Sequence record: OZ195776.1
Strand: one strand, 5' to 3'
DNA: 64,000 bases
Made by a program: the position numbers and the translations under genes. The notes under the pieces were generated by a model. The model saw nothing but the letters and a program-made list of their open reading frames with translations. It did no database searches and had not been told where the DNA came from. Shown piece after piece: positions 13,950-30,177 of the stretch. Within the stretch, counting starts at the first letter, position 1; each line of letters opens with the position of its first letter.

Positions 13950-15392
13950 TTAACCGCGGAAGAATTCCAGATCGTAGCGCTCGTTGCCAACCGCTTGCAT
14001 CATGATCTTCACAGGTTCAAGCTCACCACCCAACAAGTTGGTTAGGATGCTTGGCGAACAGCCGCTTACTAGAGCAGTGCCCACTTCACCAGACTTAACT
14101 GGTACGTTGCCGATACGACCACGTAGGTTCCAGAAAACCAGTTGTGGCATTTCGTAACCAGCTCGAGCGTACTCTTGCTTGATTACTTCCAAGTTGGTCT
14201 TCTGACCACCGCCCCAGTAACCTGCACCAGCTTGGTCGAATTCCATGTCTGACAGAATCAGCATCTTGGTTGGTAGGTCTTCTTGCGATAGACCCGCTTG
14301 AACTGCACGTTGCAATAGGACTCGGAAGACCTTGTTCACGTCAGTCGACATGTTTTCGCCTGAGCGATCCATGTTCATTAGGCGTTCGTGCAACGTTGCA
14401 CCTTTCAGTGCGTGGAAGTGTGGGTCGCTTGAGAACGAAATGAATTGGTTCTGGAAGATACCTTCATTGCGCTCTGCGATGTAAATGCCCAAAGACATTG
14501 CAACATCTTTACAAGTTACCGAACCAGTACCTGCGTTGATTGGAGTCTGCATAGAGCCAGACACGTCAACGATTGGCATGATGCGTTCGTCGCTACCTTC
14601 CATGTAGTTAGGTAGAGCCTTCCACTGTGCATCCGCTACGCGAGCATCACCTCGGTTGACTGACTTAACAATGTCGTATGGGTAAACCGCACCAGCGTTG
14701 ATCTTCTCAGTGCCTTTTTCAAGACCTTGAATGTACTGAGTGTACGTTTCCTGAGCGTTGCGACCAAACGCTTTTTGGTATCGAGCAGAAGCTACCGATG
14801 GTAGTTTGCCGAATTCAATTGCGTCCCACTCACGAGCACACATCTTCTGTTCAACGGTATCAGACAACATTGACAGAATCTTACGAAGCTGTTTGTTCTT
14901 GATATCAGCAGCTTTTGCAAGCGCTTTGAAGACATGACCGTTTGCAGACTTCTCACGAGGAGTCCACTTCGCAGCAAGGCCGTTGCGCTCGTTTACCAAC
15001 GCGTTCAGCCAAAGAGCTTCTGCATCAGCTTGAACTTGCGTACCAAAGGCAACCACAAGATCATCCCAACGACCAAGAGCTGGAACTTTGAACATTACTG
15101 CTCGCGCCAAATCTGGTTTCTCGTTACACAGTTTTGCGAATACCGTACGGAATACGTTACGCTCACCTGCACCACCACGAACGTCACGAGCCCACATCAA
15201 GATGCGAGTTGCAACTTCTTGGTTTTCACCGAACGCTCGGCTAAACAGAGTTACTGCTTCATCAGGAGTACGGCGAAGCGCACCAGCTGTGAAGAACCAG
15301 TCCAGACAAGCTGTACCGGATGTTGAATGTGTTACCGCACCGTTTTCAGTACGTGCGTCGTTTGTTTGCATTGCGTTCATAAAGTTGCTCAT
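13950..15392 (-). CDS. DUF2828-family TROVE-like/vWA protein (Ro60-related)
   Basis: TENGA, RDVRGGAGER, GRWDD, AAKWTPRE, EQKMCAREW, GAVYPYDIV, MIDAS DVSGSM, LSDMEFD, FWNL motifs. Confidence 0.85.
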   Translation of the reverse strand: MSNFMNAMQTNDARTENGAVTHSTSGTACLDWFFTAGALRRTPDEAVTLFSRAFGENQEVATRILMWARDVRGGAGERNVFRTVFAKLCNEKPDLARAVMFKVPALGRWDDLVVAFGTQVQADAEALWLNALVNERNGLAAKWTPREKSANGHVFKALAKAADIKNKQLRKILSMLSDTVEQKMCAREWDAIEFGKLPSVASARYQKAFGRNAQETYTQYIQGLEKGTEKINAGAVYPYDIVKSVNRGDARVADAQWKALPNYMEGSDERIMPIVDVSGSMQTPINAGTGSVTCKDVAMSLGIYIAERNEGIFQNQFISFSSDPHFHALKGATLHERLMNMDRSGENMSTDVNKVFRVLLQRAVQAGLSQEDLPTKMLILSDMEFDQAGAGYWGGGQKTNLEVIKQEYARAGYEMPQLVFWNLRGRIGNVPVKSGEVGTALVSGCSPSILTNLLGGELEPVKIMMQAVGNERYDLEFFRG

Positions 15393-15396
15393 TTTC

Positions 15397-15433
15397 AGAA
15401 ATCCTATTTTCAAATGTGTGCTGTATAATTTCT
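15397..15433 (-). promoter_or_regulatory. RNA-module hairpin overlapping the RBS of the DUF2828 gene
   Basis: AGAAAT-TATACAGCACAC-...-AGG-ATTTCT; same module as in eight ncRNAs at 24.8-30.2 kb. Confidence 0.6.
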
Positions 15434-15738
15434 TAACAGCGTGGCATTACCACGCCATTTTTATGGATAGTAATTTTCAGACCGTTTCCAGTCTTATTGA
15501 TGCGAACGTTCTTGTAGCCGTTTTGACGAAGAAGCTCGCTAATAATCTGACTACCCATATTCTGAGTGTCTTCGAGATGGTGTTGTATGTCCATTTCTAA
15601 GGGGAACTCTACACCATCTTTTAAAGAAGTAAACCCTTTATCCATTTCTTTTGAATAAAAATCAGTTAGAGTTTGGCGAACGTCGTGGTTTCGCTGTGTA
15701 ATCTGCTTGTTCAGATCATCGTAATGAGGAATTGTCAT
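15433..15738 (-). CDS. hypothetical protein, paralog-like to 15716-16048
   Basis: Shared ELLxxxG(Y/F)xN motif; start reassigned to MTIPH. Confidence 0.6.
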   Translation of the reverse strand: MTIPHYDDLNKQITQRNHDVRQTLTDFYSKEMDKGFTSLKDGVEFPLEMDIQHHLEDTQNMGSQIISELLRQNGYKNVRINKTGNGLKITIHKNGVVMPRC

Positions 15739-16048
15739 TGTTTGCCTTAATAATAATTCGGAACATTCGATTCGAATCGCTGAATCGGCTGTCTGGTTCG
15801 TATCCAGGGACTTTAACTTCTGCGTTTCTAAAGCCATGTAATGCCAGAAGTTCGCGCACTTGGTCAGCATGAGCTTCTGTCGTTTTGTTAACACATCCAA
15901 TTTTGATGTGGAAATCAAATGGGAATTTCCCATTTAACATACCAGAAAAGAACTTTTCAATTTCTTCACTAGCTTGTTTCTTCACCGTTTCCAGCTCACG
16001 AGCGTAACTCGCATCTGAAAGTGATTTAACTGCGTCGTACGTGATCAT
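15716..16048 (-). CDS. hypothetical protein
   Basis: ORF with GGTGG upstream; coupled to neighbours. Confidence 0.65.
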   Translation of the reverse strand: MITYDAVKSLSDASYARELETVKKQASEEIEKFFSGMLNGKFPFDFHIKIGCVNKTTEAHADQVRELLALHGFRNAEVKVPGYEPDSRFSDSNRMFRIIIKANNDNSSLR

Positions 16049-16554
16049 TACCACCACCCTTTATTAGCTTGATCAATCCAGAATTGACGCACGTTTGGTT
16101 GTGCATCTTCCCAACAAGAAGTTGTTGGAATCGCTTCGCGGTACTCATTGTAGAGCTTTTGAGCACGATCTAACATGCGACGAGCGTGCACGTCTGCAGG
16201 TTTCGCGAACACGTTTGCACGAACATCAACGGTAACAAAGTTGGTAGAGTCACCTGTGCAGTGCATCGCGCGAGCTTTGATAATTTCAACCCAAACATTG
16301 TCGTTGTGAACTGCACGAACGATACCAAGTTTCTTGGTATCGTCACAATCGTTATACATCGGACGAGCAAGACCATCAATCGGAGGAATACCGAAACCAT
16401 CCCAGCCGTCATCTTTAGCAGAATCAGGTACTAACTCCCACTCATTAGGAGAAAAGTAGTTGCGTTTGGCTTCCTTACCCCACTGCGATGTAATGTTCTT
16501 CGCTCGGATTAGACGAATCTGAGTTGAAGGTTTGTAATGATTTGCGTTTAGCAT
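16048..16554 (-). CDS. hypothetical protein
   Basis: 168-aa ORF in a coupled operon. Confidence 0.65.
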   Translation of the reverse strand: MLNANHYKPSTQIRLIRAKNITSQWGKEAKRNYFSPNEWELVPDSAKDDGWDGFGIPPIDGLARPMYNDCDDTKKLGIVRAVHNDNVWVEIIKARAMHCTGDSTNFVTVDVRANVFAKPADVHARRMLDRAQKLYNEYREAIPTTSCWEDAQPNVRQFWIDQANKGWW

Positions 16555-16880
16555 TCTTTAACCTTTTTCTTTGGAATTGGATCATTGGTAAACAAACGAT
16601 CACCTTTAGAAGCAATAATGATATCGATTTGAGTGATATACATTGGAGCACGAGCAAAACTTTGCATCATACAACTTGCACCGGACGTACCCTCTTCGAA
16701 TTTGTCGTAGAGACCTAACAGACCAGCAGCATTGCCCAATAGAGTTGGGATGCGCTCAACGCTTACATCAAGCGTTTCTGCGATTTGAGGATACGTCAGA
16801 CCACCAAGAAACAGTTTGCCAGCGTAAAGTGAACGACCTTGCTTGTTAAGACGTTGTTTGATTTTGCCTACTTGATACAT
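16548..16880 (-). CDS. helix-turn-helix protein (sigma region 4-like)
   Basis: GLTYPQIAETLDVSVERI; SD GGAG; promoter-like TTGACT-16-TAAGAT upstream. Confidence 0.6.
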   Translation of the reverse strand: MYQVGKIKQRLNKQGRSLYAGKLFLGGLTYPQIAETLDVSVERIPTLLGNAAGLLGLYDKFEEGTSGASCMMQSFARAPMYITQIDIIIASKGDRLFTNDPIPKKKVKEC

Positions 16881-16945
16881 AATTTACTCTCCAAATGCTT
16901 TGTCAATGCCCTGCATCTTACAGGGCTCAATTTTTAAGTCAACTA

Positions 16946-17275
16946 TTATTTTCGAACAAATAGCGAACCAATTTGACGATATTGTTGTGTGTATTCCAAT
17001 AGCTTGCTCATTTTCATACGAGCAACAGGATTTGATGTTACCAACATTACACGATGCGGCAAGTTGTTAGCATCAATCGCACACGATAAGATATCGTATC
17101 CTTCGTGACCAGGAGTTTCATCATCCAAGTCGTTATCCATCAACAATGTAATGTCTTGCAAGTTTGTGTGTTTAACAAAGGACATTCCCTCATCAAACGT
17201 ACGAATCACCAGCTTTTTGTCACTAGGACGTACGAACTGATTGATGTCTCGGAGATCGTCGATTAGTACGAACAT
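16946..17275 (-). CDS. cyclic-phosphate processing receiver-like domain protein
   Basis: LIDDLR, LLMDNDL...EGYD and VTSNPVAR motifs. Confidence 0.65.
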   Translation of the reverse strand: MFVLIDDLRDINQFVRPSDKKLVIRTFDEGMSFVKHTNLQDITLLMDNDLDDETPGHEGYDILSCAIDANNLPHRVMLVTSNPVARMKMSKLLEYTQQYRQIGSLFVRK

Positions 17276-17516: not shown

Positions 17517-17567
17517 AACAACCTCTTTTCATAAGTAATTACAATCATTATCCATTTTGATACGAGG

Positions 17568-17855: not shown

Positions 17856-17859
17856 AGAA

Positions 17860-18584: not shown

Positions 18585-18619
18585 AACATCTCTCCTTTGA
18601 GTATTATGGACTATTTAAG

Positions 18620-21897: not shown

Positions 21898-21973
21898 TGG
21901 TGGAAGTGGTGGGACTCGAACCCACGACCGACGGCTTATCGGGCCGGCGCTCTACCAACTGAGCTACACTTCC
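21898..21973 (-). tRNA. tRNA-Ile(GAT)
   Basis: Cloverleaf with CCA; unusual C33. Confidence 0.9.
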
Positions 21974-21980
21974 ATTAATA

Positions 21981-22056
21981 TGGTGCACCCTACTGGAATC
22001 GAACCAGTGACGCGAAGATCTTCAATCTACCGCTCTACCATCTGAGCTAAGGGTGC
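21981..22056 (-). tRNA. tRNA-Phe(GAA)
   Basis: Cloverleaf with CCA. Confidence 0.95.
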
Positions 22057-22265
22057 ATATTGTATTCGTTTATATCAAAATCGGTTAACGACTCAACGAG
22101 AATAGTTGCTTTGTAACCTACGTACAATTCATCTCCGTACCACAAGTCGGTGCATTCCTCTACAATATAAGAAGAACCAAGAACGATGTGCTTGATGTTA
22201 AAGAATTGCAAATTGCGTTCAAGAACTGTTTTAGCTCTATCTGTCAATGGTTTGATTTTGATCAT
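22047..22265 (-). CDS. hypothetical protein within the tRNA array
   Basis: AGGAG SD; 72 aa. Confidence 0.5.
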   Translation of the reverse strand: MIKIKPLTDRAKTVLERNLQFFNIKHIVLGSSYIVEECTDLWYGDELYVGYKATILVESLTDFDINEYNMHP

Positions 22266-22296
22266 AACATTCTCCTATTTGGAGAATATTTATAAT

Positions 22297-22372
22297 TGGA
22301 GCGAATGATGAGGTTCGAACTCACGACCTGTTGCTTGGCAAGCAACCGCTCTACCAACTGAGCTACATTCGC
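22297..22372 (-). tRNA. tRNA-Gly(GCC)
   Basis: Cloverleaf with CCA. Confidence 0.95.
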
Positions 22373-22833
22373 ATTTGAACTTTTCGGTTCCCGTGTATAT
22401 TTTGTATGTGGCACGGACCACAACCCCTACGCCTTGGTGCGTCAATGGAGCTAGTATTCGTTATCAAGTGCTGCTTCCATGTGCTACTCCTTATAGGTTT
22501 TCCAAACCCTGATTTCGCACTCTCGGCAGTTTCTACGTCAACTTTTCTTCCGATATCCTTTTGAAACACTCACTATCCAGTTGGATTCGCATTGCTAAGT
22601 GAGGTCCGCATCCTTAATCGATTTGTCGTACACCTGAAAATTTTAATTGCTTTGATCGAACAAATTCTTTATTGCTTTCAAATTAGTCAAATCAACTTGA
22701 AGTTGCCGTAGCATTACTTCGTTCTTTGTTGATTTAATCTGCCTCTCCAAATCCTTTATCAGAAATCCAATAGATGACTTGGTGATATTGAAATAGTTTA
22801 TATTGAAACTCGCATCTGTTAAACCTTTTTGTT

Positions 22834-22910
22834 TGGTGGATAGTGCTGGATTTGAACCAGCGACCAACGGATTATGATTCCGACGAACTACCAGACTGTT
22901 CTAACTATCC
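22834..22910 (-). tRNA. tRNA-Met(CAT), probably elongator
   Basis: Cloverleaf; anticodon loop AT-CAT-AA. Confidence 0.85.
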
Positions 22911-22912
22911 AA

Positions 22913-22988
22913 TGGTGGAGAATATCGGAATCGAACCGATGACCTCCTCCTTGCAAGGGAGGCGCTCTACCAACTGAGCTAAGACCCC
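22913..22988 (-). tRNA. tRNA-Ala(TGC)
   Basis: Cloverleaf with G3:U70 and CCA. Confidence 0.9.
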
Positions 22989-22998
22989 ATTTATTAAA

Positions 22999-23080
22999 TT
23001 CAAGATTGTCTATTGCAGGTGTCCGGACTTACTACTGCATAAAGCTGCTGCCTTCGTTACCTGGTTCAACAATCTTGGAA
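22999..23080 (-). ncRNA. putative structured small RNA
   Basis: CAAGATTGT...ACAATCTTG closing stem and internal CAGGT/ACCTG pairing. Confidence 0.45.
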
Positions 23081-23082
23081 AC

Positions 23083-23160
23083 TGGCAGGAGATGTGGGAC
23101 TCGAACCCAACAACCTTCGGATTTGGAATCCGCTGCTCTACCAATTAGAGCTAATCTCCT
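23083..23160 (-). tRNA. tRNA-Trp(CCA)
   Basis: Cloverleaf with CCA. Confidence 0.9.
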
Positions 23161-23214
23161 ATTGATGATTTTATGTTTTTAACGTGGAGATAATCAACAA
23201 CTCTCACAATCAAT

Positions 23215-23290
23215 TGGGGTGACCTGCGGGGTTCGAACCCGCGACCGCCGGAATCACAATCCAGAGCTCTACCAACTGAGCTAAGGCCAC
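23215..23290 (-). tRNA. tRNA-His(GTG)
   Basis: Cloverleaf with C73; the genomic -1 base is T, not G. Confidence 0.9.
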
Positions 23291-23534
23291 ATCTAAAAAC
23301 ACTCAACGAATGCGCTTAGATGTGATTGCCTCACATCGAATAGTTTCTCGGACTATTCCAAGACTCTGTTACAAGTCACCGCCCTATTCTATCTGTTGTT
23401 ATACTCGTGAAGGGTACCGAGTGGTCTTTTGCAAAACTATCAAGAGTTTAGCTTCGTGCAAGGCTCTTGGACCTTCTACCGATTAGCGATCGGTATTTCC
23501 AGCAATAGAACTAATCGCTCTACTCGTAAAGTTT

Positions 23535-23645
23535 TGAAGAATGATGGGAATTGAACCCACTTCGGATAACAGCATTGTAAAGAGGCTATCGATTATTTCC
23601 TACCGGCTTGTTTCAGACCTGCATTTCCTCTTTGCGAGCATTCTT
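23535..23645 (-). ncRNA. tRNA-like RNA (acceptor stem plus T arm, no anticodon arm)
   Basis: AAGAATG/CATTCTT stem; GTGGG-TTCAATT-CCCAT T arm. Confidence 0.5.
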
Positions 23646-23651
23646 TCAAAT

Positions 23652-23742
23652 TGGCGGAGAGACAGAGACTCGAACTCTGACGACGCTATTAACATCGAAC
23701 GGCTTTCAAGGCCGCGGCAGTACCAATTATGCTTACCTCTCC
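23652..23742 (-). tRNA. tRNA-Ser(TGA)
   Basis: Type II cloverleaf. Confidence 0.95.
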
Positions 23743-23748
23743 AGAATA

Positions 23749-23833
23749 TGGTGCGCAGGGTGGGACTCGAACCCACACGCCCTAAGGCCACGGAATCTAA
23801 ATCCGCGTTGTCTACCAATTCCAGCACCTGCGC
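23749..23833 (-). tRNA. tRNA-Leu(TAG)
   Basis: Type II cloverleaf. Confidence 0.95.
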
Positions 23834-24253
23834 ATGTTATTTCTACACCAGACAATAGGACTTACTTCGACTTATTCCAACGTCTAACGTATTAGCTTCA
23901 CAAGGTCGTCACCTATCATATTCGGATTCACCGTGGTTGCCACCTATTCGATATAACGTCATCGAAAACGACCTGGTATTCACAAGGGCATAATGCCTAT
24001 TTCCAAGTAAACCAACTTCGTCGTAATCATGCTAAAGAGCAAGAATCGAGGTAGTTACCTAATCAACACTCCGTAGAGCTGTTTCCAAGTATTGAAAACG
24101 CATCAAAGAGGCGTGGCCTATCATTCTTAGTTAGGTTTTATTGTTTGCTGGACACTGTCTTCTGTGCAGAACTTTTAATGTGGTTGTTTTTACGATTTCA
24201 AGAGAGCCACACTTCCTTGAGTAACCGTCCTAATCAAGTTAGGAAGGATAATA

Positions 24254-24330
24254 TGGCGGATCCTCAGGGATTTGAACCCCGAACCTTGCGCTTAACAGGC
24301 GCCCGCTCTAACCATTGGAGCTAAGGATCC
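24254..24330 (-). tRNA. tRNA-Asn(GTT)
   Basis: Cloverleaf with CCA. Confidence 0.95.
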
Positions 24331-24336
24331 GTAATA

Positions 24337-24413
24337 TGGCGCACCGAGTAGGACTCGAACCTACCTCAATCCTCGTTCGTAGCGAGGTGCCAATCCAGAT
24401 TGACTACCGGTGC
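24337..24413 (-). tRNA. tRNA-Arg(ACG)
   Basis: Cloverleaf with CCA. Confidence 0.9.
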
Positions 24414-24420
24414 AAAAATT

Positions 24421-24497
24421 TGGCGGGTGTGACGGGATTTGAACCCGCTACCTACGACGTGACAGGCCGTTATGCAAACCAACTACACCTCACACCC
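24421..24497 (-). tRNA. tRNA-Asp(GTC)
   Basis: Cloverleaf with CCA. Confidence 0.95.
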
Positions 24498-24498
24498 T

Positions 24499-24714
24499 TT
24501 AAGAAACTACATGTACAATACCTAGGATTGGAAGAACTATAAACCAACAAAGCAAAATTAAGAAGAACAATCCTGTACCAATGATACCAGGTAATTGCTT
24601 TAGACGATATCCCCAAAGTCCATACTTCTTGATCTGTTTCTGACGTTCTAACTCTGCTCGACGAGCGATATTCTCGGAGCTAAAGTAGTTCAGTATATCT
24701 CTTGTATCAAACAT
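24499..24714 (-). CDS. small membrane protein
   Basis: C-terminal TM helix; weak SD. Confidence 0.45.
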   Translation of the reverse strand: MFDTRDILNYFSSENIARRAELERQKQIKKYGLWGYRLKQLPGIIGTGLFFLILLCWFIVLPILGIVHVVS

Positions 24715-24729
24715 ATAATTCTCATAAAC

Positions 24730-24807
24730 TGGTCGGAACTGTAGGATTCGAACCTACGACCCCTTGCTCCCAAAGCAAGCGCTGCTACCAAACTGAGCTA
24801 AGTTCCG
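24730..24807 (-). tRNA. tRNA-Pro(TGG)
   Basis: Cloverleaf with CCA. Confidence 0.95.
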
Positions 24808-24816
24808 AAAATAACT

Positions 24817-24876
24817 GGATACGTTTGTCTTTTTTTTCAAATAAAAAATTAGATTTAATGTTTGCTGAATGTATCC
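24817..24876 (-). ncRNA. minimal motif RNA
   Basis: GGATAC-ATTCAGCAAAC...GTATCC end-to-end stem. Confidence 0.55.
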
Positions 24877-24882
24877 ATAAAC

Positions 24883-24958
24883 TGGCTGGCGTAGGAGGAC
24901 TCGAACCTCCGACCATCGGTATCAAAAACCGATGCGCTACCAACTGCGCTATACGCCA
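24883..24958 (-). tRNA. tRNA-Gln(TTG)
   Basis: Cloverleaf with CCA. Confidence 0.95.
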
Positions 24959-24965
24959 ATAAAAC

Positions 24966-25042
24966 TGGTGGGTGTAGAAGGACTCGAACCTTCGACCACT
25001 CGATTAAAAGTCGAGTGCTCTAACCAACTGAGCTACACACCC
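24966..25042 (-). tRNA. tRNA-Lys(TTT)
   Basis: Cloverleaf with CCA. Confidence 0.95.
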
Positions 25043-25114
25043 AAATCTTGTAACTGAGATAAGCATCTCATGTTTCCATTTGAAAGTAAACCAGTTATTT
25101 GATTTACTTTGAAA

Positions 25115-25191
25115 TGGAAGCGGGAGGTGGATTTGAACCACCGACCTTTGGGTTATGAGCCCAATAAGCTACCAGACTGCTCCATCCCGCT
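25115..25191 (-). tRNA. initiator tRNA-fMet(CAT)
   Basis: Three G:C pairs closing the anticodon stem; A1:U72. Confidence 0.9.
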
Positions 25192-25197
25192 ACAATT

Positions 25198-25282
25198 TGG
25201 TGGGAACACATACCTCCGTGGGCTTATCAACAATACTTCACTGACTCGTAAAGTTGATTACCTTCTCCGAAGAGAACTCCCA
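25198..25282 (-). ncRNA. CCA-ended non-tRNA small RNA
   Basis: TGGGA...TTCCCA-CCA ends, no cloverleaf. Confidence 0.45.
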
Positions 25283-25287
25283 TAATT

Positions 25288-25365
25288 TGGTTCTCGAGAC
25301 GGGAATCGAACCCGCTAATCCCACCTTGAAAGGGTGGTGACTCAACCAGATGGTCTGCCCGAGAA
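25288..25365 (-). tRNA. tRNA-Glu(TTC)
   Basis: Cloverleaf with CCA. Confidence 0.95.
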
Positions 25366-25370
25366 TTGTT

Positions 25371-25456
25371 TGGTGGGCCATCCTGGACTCGAACCAGGAA
25401 CTCCGTGAGGAGGACGGATTTACAATCCGCTGCAATCGCCATTCTGCCAACGACCC
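25371..25456 (-). tRNA. tRNA-Tyr(GTA)
   Basis: Type II cloverleaf. Confidence 0.95.
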
Positions 25457-25481
25457 AATGTATTTTTAACTAATGTTATCC

Positions 25482-25556
25482 TGGTGCTCTGTGACGGATT
25501 CGAACCGCCGTCACCTCATTACAAGTGAGGTGCTAAACCAACTCAGCTAACAGAGC
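25482..25556 (-). tRNA. tRNA-Thr(TGT)
   Basis: Cloverleaf with CCA. Confidence 0.95.
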
Positions 25557-25571
25557 AACGTATTTGTAGTT

Positions 25572-25600
25572 ATTATCCAGCATTCCAGCTGGTTGTAAAC
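25572..25600 (-). promoter_or_regulatory. T4-type early promoter
   Basis: GTTTAC-17 nt (ending TG)-GATAAT just upstream of tRNA-Thr. Confidence 0.65.
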
Positions 25601-25608
25601 TTGAAAGC

Positions 25609-25665
25609 AAAAAAAAAGCCGCTTTAATAAGCGGCTTCTATAAATCTTTGGAATATAGAAGACGC
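25609..25665 (-). terminator. terminator with overlapping antiterminator (attenuator)
   Basis: AAGCCGC-8-GCGGCTT-T tract; competing stem GCGTCTTCTATA/TATAGAAGCCGC. Confidence 0.8.
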
Positions 25666-25667
25666 AG

Positions 25668-25724
25668 TTAGCTCGCAGGATTTGTTTCGTAAATGTAAAA
25701 TTTTTGAAGTGAATGTGCGAACAT
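25668..25724 (-). CDS. leader peptide MFAHSLQKFYIYETNPAS
   Basis: AAGGA SD 7 nt before ATG; stop 2 nt before the antiterminator 5' arm. Confidence 0.6.
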   Translation of the reverse strand: MFAHSLQKFYIYETNPAS

Positions 25725-25846
25725 AATTGATTCCTTTGGGAAAAATAAACTTTTTTTCTTTCTCTTACTTTATATATAACAGCTTACTCAAGGATTCGGC
25801 TGTTTTAAACAAAAAATTTGAATTTTTTTCAAATTAATTTAGAATG

Positions 25847-25938
25847 TGGCGGAAGGAGAGGGACTCGAACCCTCAGACCGGCTATTAACCAGTCGATTCC
25901 TTAGCAGGGAACTCCGATACCAATTATGGGATCCTTCC
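25847..25938 (-). tRNA. tRNA-Ser(GCT)
   Basis: Type II cloverleaf. Confidence 0.95.
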
Positions 25939-25948
25939 GTTGTATATC

Positions 25949-26033
25949 TGGTACGGGTAGCGGGAGTCGAACCCGCACCTCCTAAGAGAGTGGATTTTAA
26001 GTCCACAGCATATGCCAATTTCGCCATACCCGT
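25949..26033 (-). tRNA. tRNA-Leu(TAA)
   Basis: Type II cloverleaf. Confidence 0.95.
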
Positions 26034-26040
26034 ATAAATT

Positions 26041-26127
26041 TGGTGCCAGTGGCCGGACTCGAACCGGCACGGTATTTCTACCACAGGATTTTGAATCCTG
26101 CGCGCCTACCAATTACGCCACACTGGC
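26041..26127 (-). tRNA. tRNA-Leu(CAA)
   Basis: Type II cloverleaf. Confidence 0.95.
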
Positions 26128-26128
26128 T

Positions 26129-26206
26129 TGGAGCTGCGTGAGGGATTCGAACCCCCGAAGCTTGGATTTGCAATCCAGTACATTAGACCAACTCTGCCAA
26201 CACAGC
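26129..26206 (-). tRNA. tRNA-Cys(GCA)
   Basis: Cloverleaf with CCA. Confidence 0.95.
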
Positions 26207-26293
26207 ATTTTTCAAGTTCACACTTTTGATTAGTACGGTAGTGACTCTCCGTAATGTGGTGACCCGCCGTGGACTCGAACCACGCCCTATCGA

Positions 26294-26770
26294 TTATTCT
26301 GAACGCTCTGTGCGTCTGCGTCTATACGTTGATGTTTGTGAATGACAATTTGGACACAACCAGGATAGGTTTTCCTTCCGATTATCGTTGCTAATTCCAT
26401 TAACATGTTCCAGCTCCAATGTAAGAGGTTTCCCATTCCAAGTATCCGGAATTCCACACTCATCACAGTGGTTTCGATAGAACCCTAATCGAATTGATAT
26501 TTGTCGGGCGCTGCTACGAGGTGCAGTGCAATTCTCTACAAAGAACGATTCTTCGGTGTGTGAAAATTTATTACGCTTAAACGTCTTTTTAACATCAAAG
26601 TGTTCAGTAGACACGTCGTACTTATCACACAGCACTTTCAATCGATTTATATTGTATGTACAGACCGTTATACCAACACCACGGCACACATCACTCCAAC
26701 AAAACGAATCACTTGCTACGGTGATTAGCTGTTCTAACGTATAGTGCTTAAAATCTTTATTGCTTTTCAT
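26294..26770 (-). mobile_element. HNH homing endonuclease inside the tRNA anticodon loop
   Basis: CDECG...LELEHVNGISNDNRKENLSWLCPNCHSQT. Confidence 0.9.
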
Positions 26771-26775
26771 TTTCT

Positions 26776-26814
26776 ACTCCTACTGCTGATGTGTTATTTA
26801 TACAGCAGTAGGAG
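26776..26814 (-). promoter_or_regulatory. late promoter in an RBS-sequestering hairpin
   Basis: CTCCTACTGCTG-TATAAATA-ACACAT-CAGCAGTAGGAG. Confidence 0.85.
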
Positions 26815-26863
26815 ATAATGAGTCGATTGCTCTCAACCAGGTGAGCTATCGGGCCACATAAAC

Positions 26864-26940
26864 TGGAGCAAGTGACGGGACTCGAACCCGCGACCACCGA
26901 CTTGGAAGGACGGAACTCTACCAACTGAGTTTACACTTGC
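26864..26940 (-). tRNA. tRNA-Gly(TCC)
   Basis: Cloverleaf with CCA. Confidence 0.95.
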
Positions 26941-26946
26941 AAAACT

Positions 26947-27051
26947 GGATGTACAAAATAGCTCACCATTACCTCAACCCAGAGTAACGTTAGTCTTTTA
27001 CGACTTGGCTCCTGATATGTAATTTTAGGTTATTGTTTGCGGTAGACATCC
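26947..27051 (-). ncRNA. stand-alone motif RNA
   Basis: GGATGT-CTACCG-CAAA...TTTG-T-ACATCC end-to-end stem with internal loop. Confidence 0.6.
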
Positions 27052-27079
27052 AAGGTCGAACCTTGACGAATCAAGATCT

Positions 27080-27409
27080 TTAAAACTGTTCACCTTTCGG
27101 CTCTTCGGTATTTAGAAGAGTAACCAAATCGTTTAGCGCATTATACTTGTTTATTTCAAGTTTTGTCGCTGGACGAAGGATTTCAGTGCTTTCCCAAGAA
27201 TGAGATGTGTAGTGTTCAACATCATGAACCCAATCCCAATTGTGTAGATATGCACTATCCGGAAGTTTAATGGAATGTTTGAAGTTGGTTTTCAACTTAC
27301 GTAAAAGAGTATCTGTGCTAACTGAGCCAGAGTAAACCGCTTTTGCCAATTGTTCATCGGTAATTCGCAATTTTCTTGTAACCAGTTCGCTACCTTCAAT
27401 CATGTTCAT
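27080..27409 (-). CDS. hypothetical protein, paralog of 27406-27717
   Basis: Shared (I/V)TDEQL, W..D and LR(P/K)AT..EI motifs. Confidence 0.75.
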   Translation of the reverse strand: MNMIEGSELVTRKLRITDEQLAKAVYSGSVSTDTLLRKLKTNFKHSIKLPDSAYLHNWDWVHDVEHYTSHSWESTEILRPATKLEINKYNALNDLVTLLNTEEPKGEQF

Positions 27410-27717
27410 TTCTTCATCCCGTATTCGTGACGTAGAACATTGATTGCATCATAGATCGCAATCTCACCCATTGTTGCTTTGCGAAGAAACTTCTTCTCGA
27501 TCCAGCGACCGGTACCATCCATATCTTGGTGGTAATGCCAATTGCCGTGTTCTAAGAATGCTTCTTTACGAAGCTCACCTTGCTTGCGCAGGTTCAATCC
27601 AAGTTTGTCAATCAGAACCTCAGATGGTATAGAACCGTCTGAGAACGCTTCTAAGAGCTGTTCGTCTGTAACTTGAATCTCACAAGGAACAAGACGAGTA
27701 CCTTTAATAGTATTCAT
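27406..27717 (-). CDS. hypothetical protein, paralog of 27080-27409
   Basis: GAGG SD; same motifs as neighbour. Confidence 0.75.
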   Translation of the reverse strand: MNTIKGTRLVPCEIQVTDEQLLEAFSDGSIPSEVLIDKLGLNLRKQGELRKEAFLEHGNWHYHQDMDGTGRWIEKKFLRKATMGEIAIYDAINVLRHEYGMKK

Positions 27718-27736
27718 TATATCCTCTTTAAATGAG

Positions 27737-27812
27737 TGGCACGCCTGGAGGGATTCGAACCCACGACCCGAAACTTAGAAGGTTCCTGCTCTTCCAACTG
27801 AGCTACAAGCGC
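27737..27812 (-). tRNA. tRNA-Arg(TCT)
   Basis: Cloverleaf with CCA. Confidence 0.95.
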
Positions 27813-27813
27813 A

Positions 27814-28248
27814 TTATTTCAACGTAAATTTCAAATTGCGATAATTGTACTTAGAGCCGTTATTACGACAAGTGTTAGTCCAGAAGTCACTCCAATCAAT
27901 TTTGACGGGACATTTATCTGATCCAACGCGAGTACAGAACACATCCAAGTGCGGATATTTCAATTGCAGGTTAGCTGCCGTTTGGCGAACTGCCAGTGCA
28001 TGCTCAGTACGTCTTTTAGCAAGTTCTCTACGAGAGTACGTGTTTTGCCAAAAATGACTACGCCAAATATTAACACGCTTCTCATCCCAACCCATGCTAA
28101 ACGAATGTTCAACATAACCAGATAATTTACCAGTTTTAGGGTCACGAGCGAATATTGCGTAACAACGATGTCGAGTGAAATCGGTTCGTTCATATTTGTC
28201 GCAGTTAATAACGTTACCTTTCTTGGTGGTACGAGAGTGTTTAATCAT
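27814..28248 (-). CDS. hypothetical basic protein
   Basis: GAGG SD before MIKHSR. Confidence 0.6.
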   Translation of the reverse strand: MIKHSRTTKKGNVINCDKYERTDFTRHRCYAIFARDPKTGKLSGYVEHSFSMGWDEKRVNIWRSHFWQNTYSRRELAKRRTEHALAVRQTAANLQLKYPHLDVFCTRVGSDKCPVKIDWSDFWTNTCRNNGSKYNYRNLKFTLK

Positions 28249-28426
28249 CGGACACCTCGAAAGATTTAAAGCGTTTATCGAACTCACTTAGACAAGTATC
28301 AGCCCAAGACGTTGCTACGTCTTTTTCTCTGCAATCATTTGCATTTGCTGTTGATGTCCACGCTCGAACCCACACATCACGACGTTGTTCTTCGTGACGA
28401 GCTTCTGCTTTTGTAAATTTTGGCAT
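28241..28426 (-). CDS. hypothetical protein
   Basis: GAGG SD before MPKFTK. Confidence 0.65.
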   Translation of the reverse strand: MPKFTKAEARHEEQRRDVWVRAWTSTANANDCREKDVATSWADTCLSEFDKRFKSFEVSDD

Positions 28427-28439
28427 TTTAATTTCCTCT

Positions 28440-28711
28440 TGATGCCCCACCGTGGATTCGAACCACGCAGTCCATTCATTTTCCTAATACGCAAGGGGCT
28501 TGTTAGATTTAGAACCTTAACGTCAATAGAAACTACAATTCATCGCTTTCCTGGTGTTAATAACTAACACTGCTTTCACACCAGTAATTACTCAACTCTG
28601 TATCTCAATGAAACAAGTTCGTCGGTGAAATTGTCGTTAATTAGACGACGCATTCTCGGAACAAGTTAGTCTGAGCATGACCATGTCAACGGTCTCCAGT
28701 TAGAATGGGGC
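28440..28711 (-). ncRNA. tmRNA-like RNA with non-Ala acceptor stem
   Basis: GCCCCAT/GTGGGGC stem, T arm, P2-like pairings and an internal 17-codon frame (I)NDNFTDELVSLRYRVE. Confidence 0.5.
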
Positions 28712-28733
28712 TTTGTTTAATACATAATGTAAT

Positions 28734-28852
28734 CGGCCGGTGTAGGACTCGAACCTACGACCACGAGCTTAACGGGCTATTGAGTTTAGTGTGCGGTATC
28801 GATTCTTGACAGAATCATTTCATACGTGCTCTACCAACTGAGCTAACCGGCC
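28734..28852 (-). ncRNA. tRNA-shaped RNA with motif insert replacing the anticodon loop
   Basis: Intact acceptor/D/T arms; insert GATTCT-GTCA-AGAATC-GATACCGCACAC; no CCA. Confidence 0.75.
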
Positions 28853-28862
28853 ATAATTTATT

Positions 28863-29270
28863 TTACTCTGATTTAACATCCAAAGTAAACAGTTTTGCAT
28901 TGCTTTCTTTCATCGGTTGAACGCCGACTATTTCTTCTGCAAGTAACGATGGGACAACTTGCTTCGGAATTTTGACGGTAACGCCACTTTCCTTTGCTTG
29001 CTCGCGAAGTTCTTTTGAACGTTCACGTAACATTGCAAGATGTTCTTCACGTTTTGTTACTATGTCATCAAGGTGCTCGTCGATAGTACCGATTTCGTAC
29101 TTCTCACCGTAAGCAAAGGCAGTATGCCAGTGAATCTTTTTAAATTCAGCAATCTGCTTGATGTCTTTGATGACGCGTACTTCGTCGTAAACCCAACCAC
29201 AGTTGATACATTCAATTGCGATTTGATCTCCGTTTTCATCGAAGAATAAAGCGTTACTTGGTAAACTCAT
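28863..29270 (-). CDS. hypothetical protein with a gp23-like C-terminal motif
   Basis: PSLLAEEIVGVQPM resembles the major capsid protein P-x-L-I-A-x-x-I-x-GVQPM motif. Confidence 0.65.
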   Translation of the reverse strand: MSLPSNALFFDENGDQIAIECINCGWVYDEVRVIKDIKQIAEFKKIHWHTAFAYGEKYEIGTIDEHLDDIVTKREEHLAMLRERSKELREQAKESGVTVKIPKQVVPSLLAEEIVGVQPMKESNAKLFTLDVKSE

Positions 29271-29296
29271 AATATAATCTCACGAAATAAAACAAT

Positions 29297-29426
29297 TGGT
29301 AGAGGGTGCAGGATTCGAACCTGCGCCACGGAATTTAAGAGTTTCAATGCAATTTTGGTTGCCGCAACTATTCTTTCCAGAATAATGTTTGTGCTACGTG
29401 TGCTTGCCGTTTTACACCAACCCTCT
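29297..29426 (-). ncRNA. tRNA-shaped RNA with motif insert
   Basis: AGAGGGT/ACCCTCT-A-CCA; insert TATTCT-GGAA-AGAATA-GTTGCGGCAACC. Confidence 0.7.
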
Positions 29427-29525
29427 ACGAATTGTTCTAGTTGATAGATTCTGAGTTCATCTTTCACACTCAAGGTTCTATCGGACCTGCGGCTAAGTGA
29501 CTAAGCTTCGCCGTTAAAATAAACA

Positions 29526-29666
29526 GGATGTACAAATCTTCTGGTGCGTTTTCCAATTCGCTACCTCCCCGTCGATACATTATTGGTGGGGAGGGTTGGG
29601 ATTCGAACCCAACTCATCACAAAAGTGAACCAGTTCTACTCGATTAATATTACGCTGTAGACATCC
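29526..29666 (-). ncRNA. circularly permuted tRNA-like RNA (YrlA-type topology)
   Basis: GGATGT-CTACAGCG...T arm-CCTCCCC-ACCA-linker-GGGGAGG-D arm...ACATCC. Confidence 0.7.
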
Positions 29667-29672
29667 TTAAAT

Positions 29673-29750
29673 TGGCCAGTAGTAAGGGACTCGAACCCAA
29701 GCACGGACTCCACGAGGGCGACTGCTTTACCTAACATAAGCTAAACTACT
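29673..29750 (-). pseudogene. degenerate tRNA with unpaired anticodon stem
   Basis: Acceptor, D and T arms and CCA present; anticodon arm does not pair. Confidence 0.55.
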
Positions 29751-29758
29751 TTCAAATT

Positions 29759-29877
29759 TGGCGCGTGTGACAGGACTCGAACCTGTGACCTCCGGCGGGA
29801 TTAATGTAATTGCTGTAACGATTCATTACTGAATCCATTTATTAGGCCGGCATTCTAACCAACTGAATTACACACGC
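29759..29877 (-). ncRNA. tRNA-shaped RNA with motif insert (Asp-like D arm)
   Basis: GCGTGTG/CACACGC-G-CCA; insert GATTCA-GTAA-TGAATC-GTTACAGCAATT. Confidence 0.75.
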
Positions 29878-29884
29878 GATGTTA

Positions 29885-30028
29885 AAAACAATTTGAGCAG
29901 CGTACAGGATTCGAACCTGTGTTACCTCCTGGAAATGGAATTAGCGTTAGTTGCTGAAAGCATCTTTACCAAGATACATTGCTTTTAGGTGTCCTAGGCC
30001 ACTAGACGAACGCTGCTCAAATTGTTTT
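29885..30028 (-). ncRNA. tRNA-shaped RNA with motif insert (Glu-like D arm) and extended acceptor stem
   Basis: Insert GTATCTT-GGTA-AAGATGC-TTTCAGCAACT; ~18-bp terminal inverted repeat; no CCA. Confidence 0.75.
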
Positions 30029-30034
30029 TATTAA

Positions 30035-30177
30035 GTCTTATTGCCGGCGGGGCTGGATTCGAACCAGCGACCTCGTGCTCCCTATGCAATTAATAATTGG
30101 TTGCGGTACCCAATCTTTTCAGATTGGTTTATTAATACGCGCGCTAACCTGACTGCGCTACCCGCCGGCAATAAGAC
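30035..30177 (-). ncRNA. tRNA-shaped RNA with motif insert and extended acceptor stem
   Basis: Insert CCAATCT-GAAA-AGATTGG-GTACCGCAACC; ~17-bp terminal inverted repeat; no CCA. Confidence 0.75.

What the first reader, a model, noticed from the sequence alone, without database searches (positions are those of the whole stretch)
13950..30177. Candidate phage Ro60/Y-RNA-type system: DUF2828 protein plus nine copies of one RNA module on diverse scaffolds
Seen: a 5-7 bp stem immediately followed by the core T-(A/T/G)-C-(A/C/G)-G-C-(A) recurs nine times on the - strand: AGAAAT-TATACAGCACAC (15397-15433), GGATAC-ATTCAGCAAAC (24817-24876), GGATGT-CTACCGCAAAC (26947-27051), AGAATC-GATACCGCACAC (28734-28852), AGAATA-GTTGCGGCAACC (29297-29426), GGATGT-CTACAGCGTAA (29526-29666), TGAATC-GTTACAGCAATT (29759-29877), AAGATGC-TTTCAGCAACT (29885-30028), AGATTGG-GTACCGCAACC (30035-30177). 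The stems covary while the core is kept. One copy sits over the RBS of the DUF2828 gene. Established: Ro60/Rsr are TROVE+vWA ring proteins that bind a bulged stem of Y RNAs, and bacterial YrlA RNAs join that stem to a tRNA-like domain. Inference: DUF2828 is the module-binding protein, and the RNAs tether it to different tRNA mimics, for example as decoys for anticodon nucleases or adaptors for RNA repair or decay enzymes. The core differs from the GNCGAA-type Y RNA motif, so this would be a distinct family.
Basis: partly seen in the sequence, partly recalled or inferred. Interest (0 to 1): 0.92.

Follow-up and report, generated by a model that had tools for sequence, protein, structure and literature searches.

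The report
Viral Ro60-like protein with partner RNAs
A Vibrio phage encodes a ring-shaped RNA-binding protein of the Ro60 type next to nine RNAs that share one small "handle", and the same protein-plus-handle pairing recurs in phages of many bacteria and in giant viruses, which points to a widespread, undescribed viral ribonucleoprotein built around tRNA look-alikes.

Summary
All nine copies of the module (a 6-8 bp helix followed by U-N-C-N-G-C-A) lie at the stated coordinates on the - strand of Vibrio phage D479. The DUF2828/DUF7788 protein is predicted to fold like full-length Ro60 (Foldseek E about 1e-8, TM about 0.6). A covariance model of the module hits 103 sites in 80 viral DUF2828 loci and 38 sites in 80 bacterial/MAG loci, and every hit is on the gene's strand and mostly within 1 kb. 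It also finds copies beside the gene in Felixounavirus, Listeria, Campylobacter and Mycobacterium phages and in giant-virus contigs. The RNAs come in four forms:
- minimal RNAs of about 57 nt;
- YrlA-like permuted tRNA mimics;
- tRNA-shaped RNAs with the module inserted in the anticodon stem and an intact anticodon loop;
- an mRNA leader copy that covers the ribosome-binding site.
The intron alternative fits poorly. No Rfam family matches except weak, repeated, full-length hits to Dictyostelium Class I RNAs, which share the layout and the UUACAGCAA motif. Binding, expression and function are untested. I rate this a new variant of the Ro60/Y-RNA kind, with high interest.

The parts
13950..15392 (-). 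Gene for a 480-aa DUF2828+DUF7788 protein, a predicted Ro60-like ring (HEAT-type repeats) plus a vWA domain with a complete MIDAS motif (D276, S278, S280, T350, D382 invariant)
   Evidence: Pfam PF25043 E 2.6e-46 and PF11443 E 9e-28. PHROG 850 'RNA-binding protein'. AF2 model pLDDT 86, pTM 0.87. The Foldseek PDB top 10 are all Ro60/TROVE, E about 1e-8, TM about 0.6, over the full length. Invariant columns.
15397..15433 (-). Leader copy of the module: AGAAAU-UA-UACAGCAC...AGG-AUUUCU. The 3' helix strand overlaps the Shine-Dalgarno AGGA, 9 nt before the ATG. It starts on the stop codon of the upstream ORF.
   Evidence: Sequence; script; CM R1 E 0.0024. The same arrangement, with the helix covering the SD or the AUG, occurs in related vibriophages L002, L003 and L086.
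24817..24876 (-). Minimal free RNA (60 nt) between tRNA-Gln and tRNA-Pro: GGAUAC-A-UUCAGCAAAC...GUAUCC
   Evidence: CM R1 51.9 bits, but this copy was in the model's training set.
26947..27051 (-). 105-nt free RNA with the module ends (GGAUGU-C-UACCGCAAAC...ACAUCC) and a non-tRNA body
28734..28852 (-). tRNA-shaped RNA. The module hairpin GAUUCU-GUCA-AGAAUC plus GAUACCGCAC is inserted in the 5' strand of the anticodon stem. A 7-nt loop CCGUUAA is retained.
29297..29426 (-). tRNA-shaped RNA with the hairpin AUUAUUCU-GGAA-AGAAUAGU plus UGCGGCAACC; loop CUCUUAA; encoded CCA end
29526..29666 (-). Circularly permuted, YrlA-like form. The order is 5' GGAUGU, core CUACAGCG, anticodon-stem 3' strand, V hairpin, T arm, acceptor stem closed by a loop that contains ACCA, D arm, anticodon-stem 5' strand, ACAUCC 3'.
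   Evidence: After permutation in silico, ARAGORN calls it a tRNA with an insert, like the embedded copies.
29759..29877 (-). tRNA-shaped RNA with an intact CCGGC/GCCGG anticodon stem. The module (GGAUUCA-GUAA-UGAAUC plus GUUACAGCAAUU) lies inside or next to the anticodon loop. Encoded CCA end.
   Evidence: Rfam tRNA 59.6 bits with a 45-nt insert
29885..30028 (-). tRNA-shaped RNA. The module is inserted between positions 29 and 30 of a perfect 5-bp anticodon stem (CCU|CC / GGAGG). The loop is AUUUCCA (UUC). The acceptor helix is extended to 19 bp by leader-trailer pairing.
   Evidence: (z -5.6)
30035..30177 (-). tRNA-shaped RNA. The module (CCAAUCU-GAAA-AGAUUGG plus GUACCGCAACC) sits on an 8-bp stalk inserted in the anticodon stem. 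The loop is AUAGGGA. The acceptor helix is extended to 17 bp.
   Evidence: Rfam tRNA 44.4 bits with a 60-nt insert; (z -5.8)

Best explanation
The DUF2828/DUF7788 protein is a divergent Ro60-type RNA-binding ring, and the nine elements are its cognate RNAs, the functional counterpart of Y RNAs.

The shared module is the protein-binding handle. It consists of:
- a short terminal helix, capped either by the RNA's own ends (5'-AAG...CUG-3') or by a G-N-N-A loop;
- the single-stranded U-A-C-A-G-C-A-A immediately 3' of that helix.

The rest of each RNA is a variable cargo. It can be nothing (about 57-60 nt RNAs), a permuted tRNA-like domain as in bacterial YrlA, another structured body, or a whole tRNA-shaped molecule that keeps an anticodon loop.

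The protein would thereby be tethered to a set of tRNA mimics. That would bring it, or keep it away from, enzymes that act on tRNAs. The most likely setting is the contest between host tRNA-cleaving defences and viral RNA repair or decay, either as decoys or as repair/decay adaptors.

The copy in the gene's own leader lets the protein repress its own translation by occupying the ribosome-binding site.

Shown: the protein fold prediction, the RNA architecture, helix covariation, and strand-specific gene-RNA linkage across very distant viruses. Inferred: physical binding, autoregulation and the biological role.
For: Protein:
- AF2 model pLDDT 86.
- The ten best PDB matches are all Ro60/TROVE over the full length, E 1e-8 to 4e-7.
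- The MIDAS residues are invariant.

Linkage:
- CM R1 gives 103 hits at E <= 0.1 in 80 viral DUF2828 loci, all on the gene strand.
- It gives 38 of 38 on the gene strand in 80 bacterial/MAG loci, from about 830 nt upstream to about 170 nt downstream of the gene, except one about 4.3 kb upstream in L219.
- It gives hits beside the gene in Felixounavirus VpaE1, Listeria LP-125, Campylobacter CP30A and Mycobacterium Faith1, none of which was in the training set.
- Reverse test: of 124 matches to AAAGGATNNNTACAGCAA in IMG/VR, 62 have the helix. Of those 62, 21 have DUF2828 in the same short locus, always on the same strand. Only 1 of the 62 without a helix does.
- Giant-virus-type contigs L118, L207 and L211 have 2-4 CM hits each just 3' of a 566-595-aa DUF2828/DUF7788 gene.

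Structure:
- Core-only matches carry a helix in 85/198 cases on the gene strand against 10/117 on the other strand.
- The 7 pairs are 97% paired, with 6 showing double changes.
- For the hairpin form, 74/106 against 1/12, with 32 different stems and G-N-N-A loops.

tRNA mimicry:
- About 20 long same-strand forms carry a T arm / closed acceptor stem / D arm, against 0 of 44 on the opposite strand.
- 79 embedded tRNA-shaped copies lie on the gene strand against 1 on the other strand in MAG loci.

Leader copy: the helix covers the SD or AUG in four related vibriophages.

No protein neighbour is conserved, so the pair is self-contained.
Against: - No direct evidence that the protein binds the module or that the RNAs are made. 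Promoter- and terminator-like sites around them are not above shuffled expectation.
- Similarity to Ro60 is at the level of a predicted fold. Sequence-profile similarity to TROVE chains is only E 0.38, and Pfam TROVE is not hit.
- Forty-one helix-bearing pattern matches had no DUF2828 within their short locus, so the RNA may also occur without the gene nearby. In D479 itself the gene is 9-15 kb from eight of the copies.
- Some DUF2828 loci (for example L006, L007, L025-L029, L210) gave no hit.
- Selecting training sequences by their helix inflates the covariation counts.
- The function is argued by analogy only.
Confidence: 0.72

Rival explanations
1. The inserts in the tRNA-shaped genes are introns or intervening sequences that are cut out to give working tRNAs. 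In this view the DUF2828 protein is a splicing cofactor or is unrelated.
For:
- In most embedded copies, removing the insert would restore a 5-bp anticodon stem and a canonical CU-NNN-AA loop. The anticodons are of the kind phages often supply: GUU, UAU, CUU, UCU, UUU.
- RNA ligase genes occur in the same genomes: window 32995-33450, and RtcB plus an RNA ligase near the gene in Listeria LP-125.
Against: - The insertion sites differ (28/29, 29/30, 38/39 by my reading of the sequence; ARAGORN gives 31/32 to 38/39). No site has a bulge-helix-bulge motif, and the inserts are far too short for group I or II introns.
- None of the five supplies the one missing amino acid, Val.
- Two copies have 17-19 bp acceptor helices.
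- The same module occurs as free 57-nt RNAs and as permuted forms whose ends lie inside the module. These cannot be introns and are the commonest forms across viruses.
- A genuinely intron-like insert in the same cluster looks quite different: a tRNA(CAU) split by an HNH ORF.
Confidence: 0.12
2. The module is a cis-acting signal of tRNA-cluster transcripts, such as an RNase processing site, terminator/antiterminator or promoter element. In this view it travels with DUF2828 only because both sit in tRNA regions.
For: Many copies lie between tRNA genes. The conserved AAG...CUG flanks could be cleavage sites.
Against: - The pairing holds in phages whose DUF2828 gene is not in a tRNA cluster: Faith1 and CP30A.
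- It also holds in giant-virus contigs, which have a eukaryote-type expression apparatus.
- No host-specific signal should be conserved from Mycobacterium to Vibrio to eukaryotic viruses.
- The helix sequence covaries while an 8-nt single strand stays fixed, which is typical of a protein-binding site.
Confidence: 0.08
3. The tRNA-shaped copies are working tRNAs that keep the extra arm. The bound protein shields their anticodon arm from host anticodon nucleases until use.
For: Anticodon loops, T and D arms are intact, and some copies have an encoded CCA.
Against: - A 45-60 nt arm plus a 55-kDa ring on the anticodon stem should clash with the ribosome (inference).
- Several copies have C33 or A33, mismatched stems or very long acceptor helices.
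- Permuted forms cannot decode.
Confidence: 0.05

Closest known systems
Ro60 (Rsr) with bacterial and phage Y RNAs, especially YrlA (Chen et al. 2014, PMC4201824; Thermus phage phiLo Ro60-Yrl, PMC12135203)
   Same: - Ring-plus-vWA protein fold.
- RNA genes next to the protein gene on the same strand.
- RNA 5' and 3' ends pair, with a conserved motif on or next to the 5' strand.
- A modular 'handle plus effector' design.
- A tRNA-like domain in the order T arm, closed acceptor stem, D arm.
   Different: - The protein belongs to Pfam DUF2828/DUF7788, not TROVE, and has no significant sequence match to Ro60.
- The RNA motif is UACAGCAA in a single strand after a plain helix, not GNCGAA(N)G or GGUCCGA in a bulged helix.
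- Additional topologies exist: the handle capped by a tetraloop and inserted into the anticodon stem of a complete tRNA shape, a minimal 57-nt form, and a leader copy over the RBS.
- It is also present in giant viruses.
Class I RNAs of dictyostelid amoebae (Rfam RF01414; Kjellin et al. 2021, PMC7919456)
   Same: - Length of about 42-65 nt.
- A 6-7 bp helix joins the ends and covaries.
- A conserved single-stranded motif lies directly after the 5' strand, with the same letters (C)UUACAGCAA.
- An A/U-rich variable part.
- The RNA begins AAG and ends CUG(U).
- A few long members carry inserted domains.
- RF01414 is the only non-tRNA Rfam family hit, repeatedly and full length, by the viral RNAs.
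   Different: - Scores are 19-24 bits against a gathering score of 41.5.
- A phage-only sequence profile scores the Dictyostelium RNAs at 6-13 bits, which is not significant at genome scale.
- Class I RNAs are reported as restricted to Dictyostelia, are transcribed from DUSE promoters, and have a known direct binder, the RRM protein Rnp1A.
- Whether Dictyostelia have a DUF2828 protein could not be checked here.
Intron-containing and circularly permuted tRNA genes (archaeal non-canonical introns; permuted tRNAs of Cyanidioschyzon, from my own knowledge)
   Same: Inserts in the anticodon arm; one gene with the 3' half before the 5' half and the acceptor stem closed by a loop.
   Different: No bulge-helix-bulge motif and variable insertion sites. 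The insert is a conserved protein-handle-like module that also exists alone. There is no evidence of splicing.

Membership tests
Ro60/TROVE - Y RNA ribonucleoproteins | Protein with a TROVE HEAT-repeat ring followed by a vWA domain with MIDAS | tested here: met
   Met at the level of predicted structure only: Foldseek top 10 are all Ro60, TM about 0.6, E 1e-8. MIDAS D-x-S-x-S...T...D is invariant. Pfam TROVE is not hit, and the PDB profile search gives E 0.38.
Ro60/TROVE - Y RNA ribonucleoproteins | Partner RNA encoded within a few kb on the same strand, with its ends paired into a stem that carries the binding site | tested here: met
   all hits at E<=0.1 or E<=0.05 are on the gene strand, and most within 1 kb; one search's only opposite-strand hit is at E 0.44. 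Terminal helix covariation.
Ro60/TROVE - Y RNA ribonucleoproteins | Conserved Ro-binding sequence (GGUCCGA in animals, GNCGAAN0-1G in bacteria) in a bulged helix | tested here: not met
   The motif here is U-A-C-A-G-C-A-A after an unbulged helix. The Rfam scans returned no Y-RNA-type match: the three E-value scans of module-bearing stretches gave only tRNA, RF01414 and scattered chance-level hits, and the whole-window scan at gathering scores gave only tRNA. Motif definition from PMC4201824.
Ro60/TROVE - Y RNA ribonucleoproteins | YrlA-type tRNA-like domain (T arm, acceptor stem-loop, D arm) | tested here: met
   Window 29526-29666 and about 20 RNAs in other loci.
Ro60/TROVE - Y RNA ribonucleoproteins | Physical binding of the RNA by the protein | not testable with these tools
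   Needs EMSA, RIP or a structure.
Dictyostelid Class I RNA (RF01414) | Reaches the Rfam gathering score (41.5 bits) | tested here: not met
   19.1-23.7 bits, E 0.056-3.7 in small searches.
Dictyostelid Class I RNA (RF01414) | Short terminal stem, 11-nt motif CCUUACAGCAA next to the 5' strand, about 60 nt, AAG start and CUGU end | tested here: met
   The viral consensus AAAGGAUnn-UUACAGCAA...nnAUCCUGu against GUUGAC-CUUACAGCAA...GUCAAC-UG. The first C of the motif is not conserved in the viral RNAs.
Dictyostelid Class I RNA (RF01414) | DUSE promoter about 60 nt upstream; occurrence in Dictyostelia | tested here: not met
   These are viral genomes, so the feature does not apply. Common descent is therefore open, and this is not membership of the curated family.
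Intron-containing tRNA genes | Insert at a fixed site with a recognisable splicing signal (37/38 or bulge-helix-bulge, or a group I core), giving a canonical tRNA | tested here: inconclusive
   Sites vary, and there is no BHB or group I signal. However, removal would restore a good anticodon arm in most embedded copies. Splicing itself is not testable here.

The most novel reading that the evidence does not exclude
The viral RNAs and the Class I RNAs of Dictyostelium are one ancient RNA family, and its general partner is the DUF2828/DUF7788 Ro-like protein. That protein family is an orphan found in phages, giant viruses, plants and other eukaryotes.

If so, three things follow:
- a function-less eukaryotic protein family would gain an RNA ligand;
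- a 20-year-old orphan class of abundant amoebal RNAs would gain a candidate protein partner;
- a second, Ro60-parallel RNP lineage would span viruses and cells.
Probability: 0.35. Interest if true: 0.95.

Novelty: new variant of a known kind. Interest (0 to 1): 0.88.

Why it matters
Ro60/Y-RNA particles are the only known RNPs of this design, and the purpose of the tRNA-like half of bacterial Y RNAs is still unclear.

Here a second, sequence-unrelated protein family with the same predicted fold carries its own RNA family. That RNA family has a very simple, easily mutated handle and an unusually explicit cargo: whole tRNA shapes with real anticodon loops, in arrays of different 'anticodons'. 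This makes the question of what the tRNA mimic is for directly testable in easy systems (Felixounavirus on E. coli K-12/B, cluster L phages on M. smegmatis mc2 155, Listeria phage P100/A511 relatives). It also links the question to the current interest in tRNA-targeting phage defences and viral counter-measures.

The DUF2828 protein occurs in 711 deposited phage genomes, where the RNAs are unannotated or called 'tRNA with intron'. The finding would also correct those annotations.

The possible tie to giant viruses and to Dictyostelium Class I RNAs would extend it to eukaryotes.

Tried and rejected
- **Core as anticodon-loop mimic.** I considered that U-UAC-A might mimic the loop of the missing tRNA-Val. 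I rejected this once the embedded copies were seen to keep their own anticodon loop 5-17 nt further on.
- **Introns.** See the first rival explanation.
- **Bodies copied from the phage's own tRNAs.** The best score was 34 of 56, so there is no close match.
- **Conserved neighbouring protein** (ligase, nuclease, kinase) across 165 loci. None was found; the maximum was 19 loci, and that was lineage-specific synteny.
- **Sequence-level homology to Ro60.** Not significant.
- **Phage-only nhmmer profile against 22 Dictyostelium Class I RNAs.** Scores were 6-13 bits, E >= 5 at genome size; the best random score in 20 Mb was 10.9 bits. Sequence alone does not prove the link.
- **Whether Dictyostelia encode DUF2828.** Five attempts all gave no organism names:
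  - a peptide search in the paper's proteome files;
  - a homologue search with the giant-virus protein;
  - a literature search for UCP015417;
  - a representative search plus cluster look-up.
- **Avesson 2011**, which lists the other Class I RNA-binding proteins, is not held.
- **Rfam search of the 166-237 nt scaffold class.** Nothing found.
- **Promoter/terminator scan.** Counts equal the shuffled expectation.

Full report
**Context.** The window is the last 64 kb of Vibrio phage D479 (OZ195776.1, 257,764 bp; window coordinate = record coordinate - 193,764). D479 is a T4-type jumbo vibriophage with no close sequenced relative at the DNA level. On the - strand it carries 25 ordinary tRNA genes at 21.9-27.8 kb, covering every amino acid except Val. 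The gene at 13950-15392 (-) encodes a 480-aa protein. It matches Pfam DUF7788 (E 2.6e-46), DUF2828 (E 9e-28) and PHROG 850 'RNA-binding protein'.

**Observation.**
- Five are hairpins with 6-8 bp stems and 4-nt G-N-N-A loops (GUCA, GGAA, GUAA, GGUA, GAAA), followed after 0-2 nt by U-N-C-N-G-C-A. They lie inside tRNA-shaped genes at 28734-28852, 29297-29426, 29759-29877, 29885-30028 and 30035-30177.
- Four are 'split': the strand next to the core pairs with a strand 23-128 nt downstream. They lie at 15397-15433, 24817-24876, 26947-27051 and 29526-29666.

The two topologies are circular permutations of one another. Free forms start (A)AG and end CUG. In the hairpin forms that G and those As make up the G-N-N-A loop. 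The helices all differ in sequence but keep G-A-W/W-U-C at the distal end.

My loose search rule alone is not above chance in the window (12 and 15 matches per strand). The case therefore rests on clustering, strandedness and comparative data.

**The scaffolds.**
- Folding and Rfam show acceptor, D and T arms in the five embedded copies. Two of them have acceptor helices extended to 17 and 19 bp (z -5.8 and -5.6).
- Copy 29526-29666 has the order: handle 5' strand, core, anticodon-stem 3' strand, V hairpin, T arm, acceptor stem closed by a loop containing ACCA, D arm, anticodon-stem 5' strand, handle 3' strand. This is the T / acceptor stem-loop / D order that Chen et al. described for bacterial YrlA Y RNAs. 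After permutation in silico, ARAGORN treats it like the embedded copies.
- Reading the sequence, four of the five embedded copies have the module inserted in the 5' strand of the anticodon stem, at 28/29 or 29/30. They keep a 7-nt loop in the canonical place relative to the T arm: AUUUCCA, AUAGGGA, CUCUUAA and CCGUUAA.
- Only 29759-29877 has the module in or next to the loop.
- From memory of E. coli tRNA sequences, 29885-30028 resembles tRNA-Glu and 30035-30177 resembles tRNA-Pro. I did not test this.

**The protein.** An AlphaFold2 model built from 39 homologues (pLDDT 86, pTM 0.87) was searched against the PDB.
- The ten best matches are all Ro60/TROVE proteins: Xenopus Ro60 with Y RNA or misfolded RNA, human Ro60, and Thermus phage phiLo Ro60.
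- They align over the whole length, with E 1e-8 to 4e-7 and TM about 0.5-0.6. Matches after that are to isolated vWA domains.
- The MIDAS residues are invariant.
- Sequence profiles do not reach Ro60 (E 0.38).

This is therefore a structurally Ro60-like family that sequence methods keep apart from TROVE.

**Co-occurrence.** tblastn finds the protein in 711 deposited phage genomes: Felixounavirus, cluster L mycobacteriophages (annotated 'Ro-like'), Listeria, Staphylococcus, Enterococcus, Bacillus and Campylobacter phages, and jumbo phages.
- In 80 IMG/VR loci a 50-62 nt RNA, 5'-(A)AGGNNNN(N)-UACAGCAA, about 30 variable nt, NNNNCCU(G)-3', lies beside the gene, often in tandem.
- Core-only matches, chosen without regard to pairing, carry a >=6-bp helix in 85 of 198 cases on the gene strand and 10 of 117 on the other strand.
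- A covariance model (R1) built from 42 such RNAs hits 103 places at E <= 0.1 in these loci, all on the gene strand.
- In cultured phages outside the training set it finds copies next to the gene on the gene strand:
  - three CM hits, plus a long T-arm form found by the script, in Felixounavirus VpaE1;
  - three in Listeria phage LP-125;
  - one in Campylobacter phage CP30A;
  - two CM hits, plus a long T-arm form found by the script, in Mycobacterium phage Faith1.
- In 80 bacterial/MAG loci from an independent collection, all 38 hits are on the gene strand, from about 830 nt upstream to about 170 nt downstream of the gene, except one about 4.3 kb upstream in L219.
- Reverse test: 124 places in IMG/VR match AAAGGATNNNTACAGCAA.
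  - The 62 that also have the helix include 21 with a DUF2828 gene in the same short locus, all on the same strand.
  - The 62 without a helix include 1.
- No other protein is conserved next to the gene over 165 loci.

**Forms in other viruses.**
- Long split forms of 104-139 nt with a T arm, closed acceptor stem and D arm occur in about 20 same-strand cases, against none of 44 chance matches on the opposite strand.
- tRNA-embedded forms are not peculiar to D479. Its relative D525 has three.
- Lachnospiraceae-type MAG loci carry arrays of two to four directly 5' of the gene: 79 on the gene strand against 1 on the other.
- Of 106 core-plus-T-loop sites in those loci, 74 have the hairpin, against 1 of 12 on the other strand. 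There are 32 different stems, and the loops are the same G-N-N-A type.
- Their retained loops read CU-NNN-AA with GUU, UAU, CUU, UCU, CCU, GUC, UUU, UGU, CAA and UAA.
- A third scaffold class of 166-237 nt has no Rfam match.

**Giant viruses.** I call three contigs giant-virus contigs from their IMG/VR label, their size and their gene content, not from a phylogeny.
- GVMAG contig L118 has a RING finger, DUF5760 and DUF2827. It encodes a 595-aa DUF2828/DUF7788 protein followed by four CM hits (about six modules by eye).
- Contigs of 297 kb and 319 kb have three and two hits just 3' of the homologous gene.
- A 467-kb contig had none within 4 kb.

**Leader copy.** In D479 the 3' helix strand overlaps the Shine-Dalgarno sequence. 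In KVP40-type phages and D525 the helix strand contains the AUG. In other lineages the module ends a few nt before the SD. Translational autorepression is the simplest reading, but it is an inference.

**Known families.**
- Rfam at gathering thresholds finds only tRNAs in the window.
- At permissive thresholds the only other family that recurs is RF01414, Dictyostelium Class I RNA. It is hit full length, on the right strand and with the right ends, in the window (19.5 bits), in L077 (22.3, 20.9 and 19.1 bits) and in the giant-virus array (23.7 and 19.3 bits). All are well below the 41.5-bit gathering score.
- The published description and sequences of Class I RNAs match the viral RNAs in size, terminal covarying helix, the motif (C)UUACAGCAA directly after the 5' strand, the AAG start and the CUG(U) end.
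- A sequence-only profile does not make this significant.
- I could not establish whether Dictyostelia have a DUF2828 protein.
- DUF2828 is reported in plants and mimivirus-like sequences.
- I found no paper on DUF2828/DUF7788 function or on these RNAs.

**Mechanism.**
- Best supported (about 0.7): a Ro60-type RNP in which the helix-plus-UACAGCAA handle binds the protein and the variable part, mostly tRNA mimics, is the cargo.
- What it does is open. Three observations bear on it:
  - bacterial Rsr/YrlA operons with RtcB respond to damaged tRNAs (PMC7790460, listed);
  - RNA ligases occur in these phages;
  - the RNAs display arrays of authentic anticodon loops.
- I therefore favour a role at the interface with tRNA-cleaving host defences, as decoys or as repair/decay adaptors (about 0.4 of the total).
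- Splicing of the embedded copies remains a minority alternative (about 0.12), because removal of the insert would restore a good anticodon arm.

**Verdict.** This is a new variant of the Ro60/Y-RNA kind, widespread and unannotated.

Noticed in passing
window 26245-26857 (-): A tRNA(CAU) gene appears to be split. The 5' half lies at about 26857-26818 (acceptor, D arm, AAUCGA-CUCAU). The 3' half lies at about 26293-26245 (AA-UCGAU, T arm, GGGUCACCA). About 520 nt separate them and contain the HNH endonuclease ORF 26294-26770. Neither ARAGORN nor Rfam calls it, and no group I intron model hit.
   Followed up: partly
window 29680-29750 (-): A tRNA-like piece with an acceptor helix, D arm and T arm but no clean anticodon arm and no module. 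Its fold is not better than shuffles. 44 nt of it are 97.7% identical in seven 157-kb Vibrio phages (K364, K444, K452, K469, K474-K476), in unannotated DNA.
   Followed up: partly
window 21898-27812 (-): The 25 standard tRNAs cover all amino acids except Val. None of the module-bearing tRNA shapes supplies a Val anticodon.
   Followed up: yes
L002 2879-3107, L003 4353-4565, L086 14251-14487, L009 11495-11721, L045 6494-6663, L039 11820-11985: A third class of module-ended RNAs, 166-237 nt, with two apparent subtypes. L009, L045 and L039 share a conserved 3' part (GGGAUAUUC..GCCG..GAAAAA..ACGAA). L002, L003 and L086 share a different one (...AAAGACGAAAAAA..CACUUCG.UAUUGUCU). No Rfam match; identity unknown.
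   Followed up: partly
L240-L292 (Lachnospiraceae-type MAG contigs), about 100-800 nt 5' of the DUF2828 gene: Arrays of 2-4 tRNA-shaped RNAs. Each has the module in the anticodon stem and a different CU-NNN-AA loop (GUU, UAU, CUU, UCU, CCU, GUC, UUU and others). These are likely annotated elsewhere as tRNAs with introns or missed altogether.
   Followed up: partly
L118 10940-11080: A long (AAAAC)n microsatellite lies between the giant-virus DUF2828 gene and its RNA array.
   Followed up: no
window 28863-29270 (-): A 135-aa ORF sits between module RNAs. Its last 37 residues match the N-terminus of the T4 Gp23 major capsid family (E 1.6e-5), and the record annotates it 'major head protein'. It is probably a fragment or a decoy rather than the capsid gene.
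   Followed up: no
L084 8855-12567 (Listeria phage LP-125): An RtcB-type ligase and a second RNA ligase lie 1.3-4 kb downstream of the DUF2828 gene. This echoes the bacterial rsr-yrlA-rtcBA arrangement, but the neighbourhood is not conserved in other lineages.
   Followed up: partly
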